A stretch of DNA of 64,000 bases from Oikopleura dioica (GCA_907165135.1 OU015566.1:14198001-14262000); one strand, 5' to 3'. Shown: positions 58,020-61,714, counted from the first letter of the stretch. Notes: generated from the letters alone by a model not told the origin. Numbers and translations are program-made.

Positions 58020-59930
58020 CTATAAAATATAAACACTGTTCGAAAAGGGCAGAAATTTTTTACTCTTCCATTGTTGAAAATTTGGAGTTTCGATGTTGAT
58101 GATGAAGGGGAAGGCTTTTGTAGCGATTGATCGTGAGTTTTTTCCGGTCTTTGTAGAATGGGTCTTTTTGCAGTTTTTCCCGGAGGCTTGCGGATACAGC
58201 AGGCATTCTAGCTTCAGTGAGATTGATGTCGGAAGGAGGAACTTACCGTATTTCGTAGGTGGAGTTAAAGTTCGAATGATCAGCAGTGAAATGATGCTGC
58301 GATTGAAAGAGCATCGGCATGAATCGAAAGCCCTTATTTTTTTTGAAATTGATTAGTAATTCATGAATTTTATTTCCTACCCATTTTGTCTCTGTGTTCA
58401 AGTAGCTCGTGCGCGCTTGACAGATCATTCCGGTTGATTCAACAATGCCTTCTAAAATGACGATGATTTCAAAGTGCTTCTGGTTGATGTCTTCTTCTGA
58501 CATTTCCCAGAGCGGTGACTTTTCGTTGATTTCATGGCAGACAATTAGCGGCTGAAAAAATGTCATCCATAAAACTTTCCATAGGAGTTTCCTATGACCC
58601 ATCAATCGCTTACTGTAACCAGGAAGAGTTTGTCAGCTCCGGTGTCGAATCCTACGTTCATGTCTGTTTGCATAAGTGGAATAAATTCGCCCTCTGTTGT
58701 TTGCTTGTTTTTCACGAACTTAGCCCGAATTCTGCACTGAACAATCAAGGAGCTACGCAAGTTTCCCACCCGAAACATCAGACAATATTTTCCATCGCGC
58801 TGAAAGCATGTTCTCAAATGTTAGCGGAAACCGCGCCTACTTGAGAAATGACAGCATCGGTGCTAAAGATGAGTGTGTCCGTTCGATTTGTGGGTTTTGA
58901 GAGCTTGATGAAAATACAACCGACCATTACGGCGTCCACAAATGTTCCGATCAAGCATTGGATCACGAGGGCGAGCACAGCCTCTTGAAATTGAGATTAC
59001 GAGTCTTTGAAGCACTGTGTTGATACTGTACCTGGGCAGTTAGACTGTATGTTTCTCCGGCCGTAGCCGACGGTCGTTTCTGTTTCGAGAAAGAAGAGAA
59101 AAGCAGTCAAATAGCTTCGAACTCCGACGAAACACAAAGAATGGCGCTTGGCAACTGCTTGGGTTTTTCAAATTCTCTTCCTTGATTTCAAAAAAGAACC
59201 CAAAACCCAGTCCCGATCACCTCCGCATTTCGTTTGCCAATGCCAAGCGACAAAAGCCCTTCAAGAGGAAACATTTCCAGCGCATTTGTAACTTCATGAT
59301 CTGGCATTATTTGCGGCTCCCCAGTTTCGTTGTAAAAAATAACCTTTGATCGAATTTCTTTCACTGCTTTATAAAAAAGCAGATCTCCGCGAAAATGAGC
59401 AATGACCCAGTAAACTCCGGAGAAAAGCAGCCACGTGATTGCATAAAAACTGAGGATACTAGAGAGTTTCGTTGATTTTTGCCTTACCTGAGAAAAACTC
59501 CAAGAGAATAGGTCCATTTCAGGTCGACTAGAGTCGTGAAAAAGTCCTGCAAAAACCGCTTCGTTTTCTCTTTTGCATCGTGGCGGATATTGCACTCGCC
59601 ACTTTTCGTCATGAATCTTGGTCGCTTGGACATTCTCTTGGAAACTGTCGGAGTTCTACCCATTCTCCTCGTATTTTATTGCTCGTGGCCTGCCAATACT
59701 GCTTAAAATGACTTCTATGCGGTTAATCTCTTGCCATAAAATATTGAATCTTAAAATGGTCGGACTAGGCGCCGATTGAAAACGATTGTGCATTACTGTC
59801 GTTCCATTTATCTCAAGGTCGCTGTCTAATGATCGCGAAAAAAGAAAGGGTTGATGATTAGTGCGCTGCATTCTGAAACGATTTTCTTTTTGACCTTCAC
59901 CAATGTCAACCGTATTCGTTCGATTCAAGG
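58020..59930 (-). CDS. KCNJ: Inward-rectifier K+ channel, Kir3/GIRK-like
   Basis: [22 protein letters not shown], pore [20 protein letters not shown]2 [24 protein letters not shown], and [24 protein letters not shown]. The N-terminal extent is uncertain. Confidence 0.92.
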
Positions 59931-60118
59931 GTCATTTTTGTCGATGACAGTATCTAACATTACACTTATTCGTGTCACTTTGTCATAGTAACGCATATTC
60001 ACTGCTTGAAGAAAAACCTCAAAAGAAGATTCTGAGTCAATAAAAAACGAGGCGTTCTTCAAACACCAGTTGCTATTTAATCTGCTTCGAGTTCTTTTCA
60101 CTCCCACAAATCTCAAAA

Positions 60119-60661
60119 ATGAAACTTTCCTTTCTTTTCGCTTCTTCCGCTCTCGCCGCCAATACGAGAGGCACGAACGGAGACGCAGCCGAATTGAAGA
60201 AAAATGGCTTGACTACTGAAATTCTTCACTTCAAAGTCCATGGCAAAGACGTCGACAAGTGGAACGAGCTTGATGATGAGATTTGGACGACTTACTTGGC
60301 CAAGCAAGACGGTTTTGTGAGAAAGACGACGAATGTGGACAGAACTTGCGATTTCACCAAAGCTTCCAACTGCGATGTTTATAGCCATGTCGACTGGGAA
60401 ACGTTCGACCAGTGGAAAGCTATCGATGAGAAAGAGCTTAACGATAAAACGAAGGTAAGATATCAGTATTAACTTCGTTCAAATGAGCATTTAAAGGAAT
60501 TCGACGACGCTTGCGAAGCCGCTGGCATCACCCAAAAGATGGAAAATGCCGTTCCTCTTGGAACAACTGGACTTGCCGTCATTGCCTCGACGAGTTCCGC
60601 CGCATCTGTCACCGGGGCTCTTTTTGCTCTTGTCAGTTCCCTTGCTCTCTTCCATTTGTAA
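60119..60661 (+). CDS. Secreted, probably GPI-anchored protein with a TIGR03792-like (cyanobacterial ABM-fold) domain
   Basis: Signal peptide MKLSFLFASSALA. Domain EILHFKV...LDDEIWTTYLAKQDGFVRK...WETFDQWKAIDEKEL..|EF. One GT-AG intron after 60453. S/A-rich spacer plus hydrophobic tail GALFALVSSLALFHL*. Confidence 0.8.
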
Positions 60662-60693
60662 TTAAAAAAATTATCAATAAAAAGATTACAATT

Positions 60694-61714
60694 TTAATTT
60701 TCATCAAAGTCAGCAGCAAAAAGGTTGGTCGGAGCACCAAGCCATTCGTTTGTCTCTTTCAAGGTTTGCTTCTTGAGTTCTTCTTTCCAAATTTGCGAGG
60801 CATTTTCAATTTCTGTTGCTTCGGCGAGAATTCTAGCGACGATTTGCGCCATCTAAAATGATGCTTCACCATCCCTTCTCAGGACATTTTCTTACCTTGA
60901 AACCATCAACCGGATAAGTGACTGTATTTTCAATCCGCTTGAGCATTTCAATCACTCCATCGCGCCACATGATTTCTTTAAAATTGACGGCGAAAAGCTC
61001 CCAGAACTTCTCAAATTCTTTTTCTTCGAGGATTCTGTTGAAATTTCCGTCCAAATTGGTCAAAACAGTTCTTCCACAGGCGCCTTAAAATTGCATTCTA
61101 GCGCCTTTTCTTCAAACGAATTCCCCTCAAACCTGAAACTCCCGCGACAAAATGCAAAAACTCGTGCTTCGATAGTTGGTCGTTCATGTTTTTATCCACA
61201 TACGGCCAGAACTTGTCCGAAATCAAAGCGATATTGATCGGTACTTTGTTTTCCAAAATCTTCATGAAGTAATTTCCGCAAATGATCAAATTGTCTTTTG
61301 TTATAAAATCGCTCTTTTTCTTGTTGCAGAATTTCCACAGCTTTTCCAGCGCACTAGAATCATGATAAAAGCACGTAAAAAAGAATAAAAGAGGACTTAC
61401 TCTTTCGGGTAGTTTTGAAAAATCCTCGAAGAATCCTTGTTCGTCGGATCCCCCAAAATTCTGAAGATAATGTCCAACTCTGTCTCGTATCTTTCAACCA
61501 GCGCCCTCATCTTCATCTTCATTTCTCTCTCCCTCTTTTCATCCTTTTCTCTTTCGTCCAGCTGCATCTGCGCGTGCAAGTCTTCAGTAAGCGCGCTGAT
61601 GTAGCCTCGCATGTCTTGCATGATCTCGGATTCGAGGAAGAAGAGGACGTAGATGCTCGTAGAAATCCATAACGAAGAAAAGGCTAGGAGGTACTTTTGT
61701 CTTGTGGAAAACAT
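60694..61714 (-). CDS. Type II membrane protein with EF-hand motifs
   Basis: N-terminal TM YLLAFSSLWISTSIYVLFFL, coiled coil, and EF-hand-like DKNMNDQLSKHEF and DGNFNRILEEKEF. The 3' end is uncertain. Confidence 0.55.

What the first reader, a model, noticed from the sequence alone, without database searches (positions are those of the whole stretch)
60119..60661. Candidate cyanobacteria-to-tunicate gene transfer: a TIGR03792-like domain remodelled as a GPI-anchored surface protein
Seen: EILHFKV-x10-LDDEIWTTYLAKQDGFVRK...WETFDQWKAIDEKEL...EF, with an added signal peptide, a spliceosomal intron, a Cys-x7-Cys loop insert and a GPI-type C-terminus. Known (recalled consensus): the uncharacterised cyanobacterial TIGR03792 family (ABM-like dimeric alpha-beta barrel) reads roughly ELLKFKV...DAEIWTxxLAxxPGFLGK...WxxREQWKAIxxxxL...F and is cytosolic. 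Appendicularians filter-feed on picocyanobacteria. Inference: a domesticated foreign gene with a new extracellular role such as binding or modifying small molecules, pigments or toxins from prey. The intron and host flanks argue against contamination.
Basis: partly seen in the sequence, partly recalled or inferred. Interest (0 to 1): 0.8.

Follow-up and report, generated by a model that had tools for sequence, protein, structure and literature searches.

The report
Foreign-type ABM-fold surface protein gene in Oikopleura
The tunicate Oikopleura dioica carries a real, intron-containing, conserved gene of the mainly cyanobacterial TIGR03792 protein family. The gene probably entered larvaceans by horizontal transfer, but its nearest relatives are secreted proteins of marine microbial eukaryotes, so a direct jump from cyanobacteria is not shown.

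Summary
Window 60119-60661 (+) is a two-exon gene with a 42-nt GT..AG intron. Its 166-aa product is identical to the annotated O. dioica protein CAG5108635.1.

- **Family:** exon 1 matches TIGR03792 above the curated cut-off (47.7 vs 45.75 bits, E 1e-12). The model folds as an ABM-type alpha+beta barrel.
- **Status in the genome:** single copy, flanked by a Kir channel gene, base composition like the host. It is present with the same intron position in the Norwegian O. dioica assembly (dN/dS about 0.13). A related gene (49% identity to P0001) with an intron at the same site sits on a Tara contig beside a myosin gene 82% identical to O. dioica's.
- **Interpretation, partly supported:** no named animal other than O. 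dioica appeared among the roughly 40 hits whose sources I checked. However, the closest homologs are secreted, often tandem or amine-oxidase-fused proteins on eukaryotic contigs.
- **Shared features:** these proteins and the larvacean ones share a lengthened beta2-beta3 loop, which is absent from all 48 cyanobacterial sequences compared. The signal peptide and the Cys loop are therefore not tunicate inventions.
- **Donor unresolved:** trees group larvacean and eukaryote-type sequences only moderately (86/81). AU tests cannot reject a cyanobacterial sister (p 0.28-0.44).
- **Untested:** the GPI anchor and the function are inferred only.

Earlier notes from this scan reported similar foreign-type genes elsewhere in this genome.

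The parts
60119..60454 (+). Exon 1, 112 codons: signal-peptide-like leader plus the TIGR03792 domain
   Evidence: ORF and sequence. Translation equals residues 1-112 of P0001.
60119..60160 (+). Signal-peptide-like N-terminus MKLSFLFASSALAA (A-x-A before the likely cleavage site)
   Evidence: Read from the sequence; hydropathy maximum 1.89. Conserved in the Norwegian and metagenomic orthologs. Cleavage not tested.
60218..60445 (+). TIGR03792 / ABM-fold domain (residues 34-109)
   Evidence: hmmscan E 1e-12, 47.7 bits, above the 45.75 cut-off. Genome family search 48 bits. AlphaFold model pLDDT above 93 over residues 30-130. Foldseek top hits are SnoaB and other ABM proteins.
60347..60373 (+). 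C77-x7-C85 pair in the lengthened beta2-beta3 loop
   Evidence: Sequence. The model has strands 66-73 and 84-93 around it. K69-to-W93 spacing is 23 residues, against 16-17 in all 48 cyanobacterial sequences.
60455..60496 (+). 42-nt spliceosomal intron, phase 0, GT..AG, with an in-frame stop
   Evidence: Sequence. Same position in the Norwegian O. dioica ortholog (40 nt) and in the larvacean-like Tara contig L003. The metatranscriptome-derived P0004 lacks it.
60497..60661 (+). Exon 2, 54 codons plus TAA: last helix and strand of the fold, C118, linker and hydrophobic tail
   Evidence: Sequence. Translation equals residues 113-166 of P0001.
60587..60658 (+). GPI-type C-terminal signal: small-residue region S143-S149, then hydrophobic A153-L166 ending the protein
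   Evidence: Hydropathy and uncharged-run count. Same layout in P0006, P0004 and P0003. Anchor addition is inferred, not tested.
60676..60681 (+). AATAAA polyadenylation signal, 15 nt after the stop codon
   Evidence: Read from the sequence.
59188..59663 (-). Upstream host neighbour: exons of an inward-rectifier K+ channel gene
   Evidence: Pfam IRK PF01007: E 6e-10 and 6e-5 on two ORFs.
60694..61289 (-). Downstream convergent multi-exon host gene; its 3' end lies 32 nt beyond the stop codon of this gene
   Evidence: ORFs. No Pfam hit. An EF-hand-like loop is seen by eye only.

Best explanation
This is a functional, single-copy larvacean gene of non-animal ancestry. It belongs to the TIGR03792 family (ABM-type alpha+beta barrel).

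It most likely entered the appendicularian lineage by horizontal transfer before at least two larvacean lineages split, then acquired or kept a phase-0 intron. The donor is unresolved. The best-fitting source is the secreted, loop-extended TIGR03792 branch found in marine microbial eukaryotes (possible prey), rather than a cyanobacterium.

Inferred mechanism: the product enters the secretory pathway through its N-terminal signal peptide. The C77-C85 pair staples the extended loop. The C-terminal signal is exchanged for a GPI anchor, which displays a small ABM barrel on an epithelial surface. Such folds usually pair into a dimer. All family-invariant residues are kept (E34, D52, W56, T57, G65, K69, W93, W99), so it probably retains the family's unknown activity: cofactor-independent binding or oxygenase/isomerase-type conversion of a small, probably aromatic or amine-derived molecule. 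The recurrent fusion of the eukaryotic homologs to a flavin amine oxidase points the same way.

Shown: family membership, fold, gene structure, host context, conservation and selection. Inferred: transfer, secretion, GPI anchoring, dimer and chemistry.
For: - **Family and fold:**. Invariant residues kept.
- **Host gene:** intron, poly(A) signal and Kir channel flank. GC 0.42-0.45, like the surroundings. Single copy.
- **Second assembly:** the Norwegian O. dioica ortholog (two allelic entries, CBY24091 and CBY30831) has its intron at the same site. dN 0.25, dS saturated, dN/dS about 0.13.
- **Transcription and splicing in nature:** P0004, from the MERC metatranscriptome catalogue, reads straight across the exon junction. 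Genomic ORFs P0005, P0008 and P0009 read into the intron.
- **Second larvacean-like lineage:** P0014/P0099 on contig L003 is 49% identical to P0001, has an intron at the same site, and lies next to a muscle myosin 82% identical to O. dioica's, against 70% for Ciona and 50-68% for vertebrates.
- **Animal distribution:** of 91 phmmer hits in 1.84 billion representatives, none of the roughly 40 I checked carries an animal name other than O. dioica.
- **Eukaryote-type affinity:** phmmer rank. Bipartition {larvacean + eukaryote-type} against {all bacteria}, support 86/81. The K-to-W loop is 22-23 residues in larvaceans and 19-52 in eukaryote-type sequences, against 16-17 in 48 of 48 cyanobacterial and 15-18 in 20 of 20 group-D bacterial sequences. 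They also share a C-terminal P-x-x-G-(L/F)-x-V motif.
- **Eukaryotic context of those homologs:** ATG101, an intron-split MCM gene, WW/CD36/mitochondrial carrier genes, and amine-oxidase fusions.
Against: - The domain is short (84-118 usable columns). The larvacean + eukaryote-type grouping has only moderate support, falling to 49/90 in the extended alignment.
- AU tests do not reject larvacean + cyanobacteria (p 0.277 and 0.387) or larvacean + picocyanobacteria (p 0.443).
- The organisms behind the eukaryote-type homologs are unnamed. One of them (P0029) lies beside a cadherin-repeat gene, so some may be animals or their unicellular kin. That would favour old vertical descent with losses.
- Absence from other tunicates and animals rests on annotated proteins inside a clustered library, not on genome searches.
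- No RNA reads of this strain could be laid on the gene.
- No GPI or signal-peptide predictor was run, the dimer job gave no verdict, and no ligand or activity is known for any family member.
Confidence: 0.6

Rival explanations
1. Direct cyanobacterium-to-tunicate transfer. A cytosolic picocyanobacterial TIGR03792 gene was taken up from prey, and the signal peptide, Cys loop, intron and GPI tail were then added in the tunicate.
For: - Named members of the family are overwhelmingly cyanobacterial: 319 loci, 117 of 401 cyanobacterial genomes, and the Atlas clusters.
- AU tests do not reject a larvacean + cyanobacteria clade (p 0.277 and 0.387) or a larvacean + picocyanobacteria clade (p 0.443).
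Against: - Cyanobacterial and picocyanobacterial profiles give the lowest scores to the larvacean proteins: 54 and 36 bits, against 87 for the eukaryote-type profile.
- All 48 cyanobacterial sequences lack the loop extension. Picocyanobacteria also have R in place of K69 and WEPWL in place of IWTxxL.
- The ML trees place cyanobacteria across a supported branch from the larvacean clade.
- Signal peptides and loop cysteines already exist in non-tunicate homologs.
Confidence: 0.12
2. Vertical descent. The loop-extended, secreted TIGR03792 branch is an old eukaryotic gene, itself perhaps of bacterial origin, that was lost in most animals and retained in larvaceans.
For: - Many homologs lie on eukaryotic contigs.
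- One lies beside a cadherin-repeat gene that could be holozoan.
- The larvacean clade branches beside, not inside, the sampled eukaryote-type sequences.
Against: - No named animal, fungal or plant protein other than O. dioica's appeared among the hits checked, although the library includes NCBI and UniRef.
- This scenario needs very many independent losses across animals.
- The larvacean clade is not specifically sister to the cadherin-linked group B.
Confidence: 0.22
3. Contamination or misassembly: a microbial fragment wrongly placed in the O. dioica assembly.
For: None beyond the unusual family.
Against: - The gene has a 42-nt spliceosomal intron with an in-frame stop and an AATAAA signal, and host-like GC content.
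- It lies inside a 14.5-Mb chromosome contig between animal genes.
- An independent Norwegian assembly carries the ortholog with the same intron.
Confidence: 0.01

Closest known systems
TIGR03792 family (NCBIfam hypothetical equivalog; named members mostly cyanobacterial)
   Same: HMM match above the curated cut-off. All invariant residues are kept (E, D, W-T, G, K, W, W). Same ABM-like fold, with TM up to 0.88 to cyanobacterial TIGR03792 models in the Atlas.
   Different: - Encoded by an animal gene with an intron.
- The beta2-beta3 loop is 5-7 residues longer and carries a Cys pair.
- It has a GPI-type C-terminal signal.
- It lacks the conserved cyanobacterial neighbourhood of a phasin-like gene, an FKBP gene and a zinc-ribbon gene.
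- The cyanobacterial group profile scores it only 54 bits.
Unnamed eukaryote-type TIGR03792 proteins from marine metagenomes and metatranscriptomes (for example P0011-P0035, and the amine oxidase fusions P0016-P0018)
   Same: Signal peptides, an extended loop often with Cys or N-x-S/T, the C-terminal P-x-x-G-(L/F)-x-V motif, and sometimes TM or hydrophobic C-termini. They are the best phmmer and profile scores to the Oikopleura protein.
   Different: Many are tandem two-domain proteins or are fused to a flavin amine oxidase (PF01593). The source organisms are unknown. The Oikopleura protein is single-domain, and O. dioica lacks the N-terminal C-x2-C seen in P0011, P0013 and P0019.
ABM (antibiotic biosynthesis monooxygenase) fold proteins: SnoaB (3kg0), ActVA-Orf6 (1lq9), LsrG (3qmq), IsdI
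   Same: Ferredoxin-like beta-alpha-beta barrel. These are the best Foldseek matches (E 2.5e-4, TM by target 0.66), and a weak profile match to 1tz0 agrees.
   Different: Sequence identity is 13-19%, and Pfam ABM (PF03992) does not match. The catalytic residues of those enzymes were not compared. Those proteins are cytosolic bacterial enzymes.
Known tunicate horizontal acquisitions: cellulose synthase CesA and GH6 (PMC3390340, PMC7464555, PMC6523144)
   Same: A microbial-type gene, carrying introns, fixed in a tunicate lineage and encoding a surface or extracellular function.
   Different: CesA is shared by all tunicates and has a known function. This gene was found here only in larvacean-type sequences, its donor is unresolved and its function is unknown.
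GPI-predicted oikosins oik44 and oik45 of the Oikopleura house proteome (PMC3390340)
   Same: Small, secreted, GPI-predicted O. dioica proteins. The start MKL/MKF fits the M(K/R)(I/L/F) signature reported for 59 of 80 oikosins.
   Different: Read by eye, the oik45 primer sequences do not occur in the 541-nt Norwegian gene printed. The accessions CBY24091 and CBY30831 are not in the paper's held supplements. Membership of the house proteome is untested.

Membership tests
TIGR03792 family | Score at or above the curated NCBIfam cut-off (45.75 bits) | tested here: met
   47.7 bits, E 1e-12, on exon 1 alone. 48 bits in the six-frame genome search.
TIGR03792 family | Family-invariant residues (E34, D52, W56, T57, G65, K69, W93, W99 in P0001 numbering) | tested here: met
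   Invariant or at least 90% conserved columns in alignments of 66 and 28 members; all are present in P0001.
TIGR03792 family | Compact beta2-beta3 loop of the bacterial members (16-17 residues between the conserved K and W) | tested here: not met
   23 residues in P0001, against 16-17 in 48 of 48 cyanobacterial rows. This is a subgroup trait shared with the eukaryote-type members, not an exclusion from the family.
ABM / dimeric alpha+beta barrel superfamily | Ferredoxin-like beta-alpha-beta fold | tested here: met
   AlphaFold2 mean pLDDT 83.9, core above 93. Foldseek hits to SnoaB, FasU, RslO4, LsrG and ActVA-Orf6. Atlas structural neighbours agree.
ABM / dimeric alpha+beta barrel superfamily | Pfam PF03992 (ABM) sequence match | tested here: not met
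   No Pfam family up to E 10 for either exon.
ABM / dimeric alpha+beta barrel superfamily | Homodimer that completes the barrel | tested here: inconclusive
   The two-copy complex job gave no verdict (score 0.21, mark 0.32).
GPI-anchored surface protein | N-terminal signal peptide, plus a C-terminal small-residue omega region, a spacer and a terminal hydrophobic stretch with no cytosolic tail | tested here: inconclusive
   The layout fits and is conserved in the orthologs P0003, P0004 and P0006. No dedicated predictor or experiment was available.
Horizontally acquired animal gene | Integrated in the host genome: intron, host flanks, host composition, a second assembly | tested here: met
Horizontally acquired animal gene | Absent from related animals | tested here: inconclusive
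   No named animal other than O. dioica among about 40 checked hits of the exhaustive protein search. Other tunicate genomes could not be searched.
Horizontally acquired animal gene | Nested within a donor clade with support | tested here: inconclusive
   The larvacean clade groups with eukaryote-type sequences at 86/81 and 49/90. AU tests do not reject cyanobacterial alternatives.
Horizontally acquired animal gene | Maintained by selection | tested here: met
   dN/dS about 0.09 for exon 1 and 0.22 for exon 2, Okinawa against Norway, with dS saturated.

The most novel reading that the evidence does not exclude
Larvaceans domesticated a gene from eaten microbial eukaryotes, an alga- or protist-to-animal transfer. 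The gene belongs to an undescribed extracellular, loop-extended eukaryotic branch of TIGR03792, which elsewhere is fused to cell-surface flavin amine oxidases. In the animal it works as a GPI-anchored ABM-type enzyme or binder acting on prey-derived or amine-derived small molecules at the feeding or house-building epithelium.
Probability: 0.3. Interest if true: 0.65.

Novelty: new variant of a known kind. Interest (0 to 1): 0.45.

Why it matters
Well-supported foreign genes in chordates are rare. In tunicates the cellulose synthase transfer shaped the whole body plan. This gene would be a lineage-restricted addition in larvaceans, animals that matter for ocean carbon flux.

The work also exposes a secreted, eukaryotic branch of a family known only as an uncharacterised cyanobacterial protein. 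Members of that branch are often fused to amine oxidases, which gives the first functional handle on TIGR03792.

It is also a caution: the obvious 'prey cyanobacterium' donor is not what the sequence similarity favours. I found no paper that mentions TIGR03792 or these accessions.

Tried and rejected
- **RNA reads:** three oligo-dT runs and one single-cell run labelled with the same species gave 0-1 reads on 59900-60900 at 88% likeness or more. The organism or strain was not shown to be in those runs, so this is no test of expression.
- **Homodimer job:** no verdict. It counts neither for nor against.
- **Word-indexed protein search with a 66-sequence profile:** returned only 14 proteins and no new names.
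- **Locus search with broad alignments:** The narrower one found only the filamentous-cyanobacterial subgroup.
- **Atlas searches:** only cyanobacterial clusters carry taxa, so they did not help with the eukaryote-type groups.
- **Context of group-B homologs P0037, P0043 and P0252:** no informative neighbours.
- **Cyanobacterial synteny** (phasin-like, FKBP, zinc-ribbon genes): conserved, but it gives no clue to function.
- **Amine oxidase part of the fusions:** no relative among PDB sequences.
- **3' exon structure of the L003 gene:** I could not settle it. Two splice options give different tails, so I claim no GPI signal for it.
- **Oikosin identity:** not established.
- **Joined sequences:** full-length searches used the database record P0001, not a sequence I joined. 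dN/dS was counted exon by exon. One script joined the two exons of the Norwegian locus only to locate its intron, and the result equalled the database protein P0006.

Full report
**1. What is there**

The window is Oikopleura dioica OKI2018_I69 chromosome 1 (G000:C4:14198001-14262000).

- At 60119 an ATG opens a 112-codon exon ending at 60454.
- A 42-nt GT..AG intron with an in-frame stop follows (60455-60496).
- A 54-codon exon ends with TAA at 60659-60661.
- AATAAA lies at 60676-60681.

The two exon translations equal residues 1-112 and 113-166 of the database protein P0001 (CAG5108635.1). I used that record for full-length work instead of joining exons myself.

**2. Family and fold**

- Exon 1 alone matches NCBIfam TIGR03792 at E 1e-12 and 47.7 bits, above the curated 45.75.
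- Pfam finds nothing.
- A six-frame family search of the whole genome finds this one place only, at 48 bits. A protein search also finds one copy.
- An AlphaFold2 model built on a 66-sequence alignment has mean pLDDT 83.9, with the core above 93.
- Its best PDB matches are ABM-fold proteins: SnoaB, FasU, RslO4, LsrG and ActVA-Orf6.
- The Atlas's own model is closest to cyanobacterial TIGR03792 clusters (TM 0.88 by target).
- A profile search of PDB sequences gives only weak ABM hits (1tz0, 5f9p).
- The family-invariant residues E34, D52, W56, T57, G65, K69, W93 and W99 are all kept.

**3. It is a host gene under selection**

- An inward-rectifier K+ channel gene lies upstream on the minus strand (Pfam IRK).
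- A convergent multi-exon gene ends 32 nt downstream.
- GC content (0.42-0.45) matches the surroundings.
- The Norwegian O. dioica assembly carries the ortholog P0006 (CBY24091.1, with the allelic entry CBY30831.1). It has a 40-nt intron at the same phase-0 site but different neighbours.
- Counted exon by exon, dN/dS is 0.09 and 0.22, about 0.13 overall, with dS saturated.
- P0004 comes from the MERC catalogue. To my knowledge that catalogue was assembled from Tara eukaryotic metatranscriptomes. P0004 reads straight across the exon junction, whereas genomic ORFs from metagenomes (P0005, P0008, P0009) run into the intron. This is indirect evidence of transcription and splicing in a close relative.
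- Reads from runs labelled with the species gave no usable coverage.

**4. A second larvacean-type lineage**

P0014/P0099 is 49% identical to P0001 and lies on Tara contigs. In L003 the gene has an intron at the same site, after ..KLAQIDQ. It sits about 3 kb from exons of a muscle myosin heavy chain. One 489-aa myosin piece is 82% identical to three O. dioica loci, against 70% for Ciona savignyi and 50-68% for vertebrate fragments.

I take this organism for another appendicularian; that is an inference. Its 3' exon structure is ambiguous, so I make no claim about its C-terminus. P0011, P0013, P0019 and P0033 (metatranscriptome) form a clade with these sequences (95-100 / 98) and share the Cys pair in the loop. 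Their organisms are unknown.

**5. Who else has the family**

phmmer of P0001 against 1.84 billion representatives gives 91 hits at E 1e-3 or better. After the larvacean-type clade, the best hits are:

- proteins with signal peptides;
- tandem two-domain proteins;
- 860-1050-aa fusions with a flavin amine oxidase (PF01593).

Their contigs are eukaryotic:

- ATG101 beside P0017;
- an intron-split MCM gene and a Complex1_LYR gene beside P0034;
- WW, CD36, mitochondrial carrier and GT8 genes around P0264.

P0029 (group B) lies beside cadherin-repeat ORFs, so some of these organisms might be holozoans.

Short bacterial forms score lower. One group (P0064 and relatives) sits on a bacterial contig with an ECF sigma factor. 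It is not cyanobacterial: identity is at most 47% in 401 cyanobacterial genomes. The canonical cyanobacterial group is large, with 319 loci in species-representative genomes and 117 of 401 genomes positive. It includes small picocyanobacterial genomes whose copies carry an N-terminal hydrophobic leader. Lipoprotein-like leaders occur in other bacterial members. 'Cytosolic' is therefore not a family rule.

Among about 40 hits whose sources I looked up, only the O. dioica entries carry an organism name. One caveat applies: named members could hide inside 50%-identity clusters.

**6. Where the larvacean clade branches**

- **84 columns, 114 rows.** The ML tree has a bipartition {9 larvacean-type + 48 eukaryote-type} against {all bacterial rows} at 86/81. 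Cyanobacteria plus picocyanobacteria form a clade at 98/92.
- **Domain extended to 118 columns.** Cyanobacteria are again separate (88/79). The larvacean clade sits with the eukaryote-type groups and the P0064 bacterial group, but at only 49/90.
- **AU tests reject nothing.** Larvacean + all cyanobacteria: p 0.277 (84 columns) and 0.387 (118 columns). Larvacean + picocyanobacteria: p 0.443. Two long branches are easily joined.

Three tree-independent observations favour the eukaryote-type affinity:

- **Loop length.** Between the invariant K and W there are 22-23 residues in larvacean-type rows and 19-52 in all 60 eukaryote-type rows. There are 16-17 in 48 of 48 cyanobacterial rows and 15-18 in 20 of 20 group-D bacterial rows. 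Picocyanobacteria also replace the K by R.
- **C-terminal motif.** P-x-x-G-(L/F)-x-V is shared by larvacean-type and eukaryote-type proteins.
- **Group profile scores for P0001.** Eukaryote C 87.1, eukaryote B 76.5, bacterial D 73.6, bacterial E 71.6, cyanobacteria 54.4, picocyanobacteria 36.5 bits.

One eukaryote-type protein (P0026) even has a C-x8-C pair at the same loop and a C-terminal TM helix. The signal peptide, the loop extension and the membrane attachment therefore predate, or lie outside, the tunicate copy.

**7. Reading**

- **Most likely (about 0.6).** A foreign-origin gene fixed in larvaceans before at least two lineages split. The donor is unresolved, but the gene is closest to the secreted eukaryotic branch of the family.
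- **Direct cyanobacterial origin (about 0.12).** Not excluded, but the least similar option.
- **Vertical descent with massive loss (about 0.22).** Stays open until named genomes are searched.
- **Contamination.** Excluded for practical purposes.

Mechanism, inferred: secretion, a C77-C85 disulfide, GPI attachment, and a small ABM barrel on the cell surface that keeps the family's unknown small-molecule chemistry. The uncharged 38-residue C-terminus with a small-residue region and a 14-residue hydrophobic end supports GPI attachment. The amine-oxidase fusions are the only functional hint.

The MKL/MKF start fits the oikosin N-terminal signature reported in PMC3390340, but I could not link the gene to the house proteome.

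**8. Literature and earlier notes**

No paper in the library mentions TIGR03792 or the protein accessions. Papers on tunicate horizontal transfer concern CesA, GH6 and rusticalin.

Two earlier notes of this scan describe other foreign-type, intron-bearing genes in this genome. One of them also has its closest relatives in single-celled eukaryotes. I did not test those.

Noticed in passing
L090:3231-6014; L127:8046-10714; L006:8001-9967: Marine eukaryotic contigs encode 860-1050-aa proteins that fuse a divergent flavin amine oxidase (PF01593) to two TIGR03792 domains, some with a signal peptide. In L127 and L006 the two parts are called as adjacent or overlapping ORFs. This architecture appears to be undescribed.
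   Followed up: partly
L109-L124 (picocyanobacterial-size genomes, 1.6-2.9 Mb): The small cyanobacterial genomes carry a divergent 135-200-aa TIGR03792 form. It has an N-terminal hydrophobic leader, WEPWL in place of IWTxxL, and R in place of the invariant K.
   Followed up: partly
L010-L089 (cyanobacterial loci): In filamentous and unicellular cyanobacteria the TIGR03792 gene keeps the same neighbours. A phasin-like gene occurs in 65 of 80 loci, an FKBP isomerase in 56 and a zinc-ribbon protein in 53.
   Followed up: partly
window 59188-59663 (-): Exons of an inward-rectifier potassium channel gene lie directly upstream (Pfam IRK).
   Followed up: partly
window 60694-61289 (-): A convergent multi-exon gene ends 32 nt beyond this gene's stop codon. 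One exon has an EF-hand-like loop, but Pfam gives no hit on single exons.
   Followed up: no
L125 (Norwegian O. dioica, FN653038.1 239462-252002): The ortholog has different neighbours (a PLAC8 gene and a gene for a 4850-aa product) from those in the Okinawa genome. This fits the known scrambling of gene order between O. dioica lineages.
   Followed up: no
L091:1698-3716: A homolog with a conserved N-x-T sequon in the loop (P0029) lies beside cadherin-repeat ORFs on a 37% GC metagenomic contig. The organism is unknown and could be a holozoan.
   Followed up: partly
P0011, P0013, P0019, P0033, P0050, P0068: The non-dioica members of the larvacean-type clade carry an extra C-x2-C motif just before the first strand. 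O. dioica lacks it and instead has a conserved third cysteine (C118) in exon 2.
   Followed up: no
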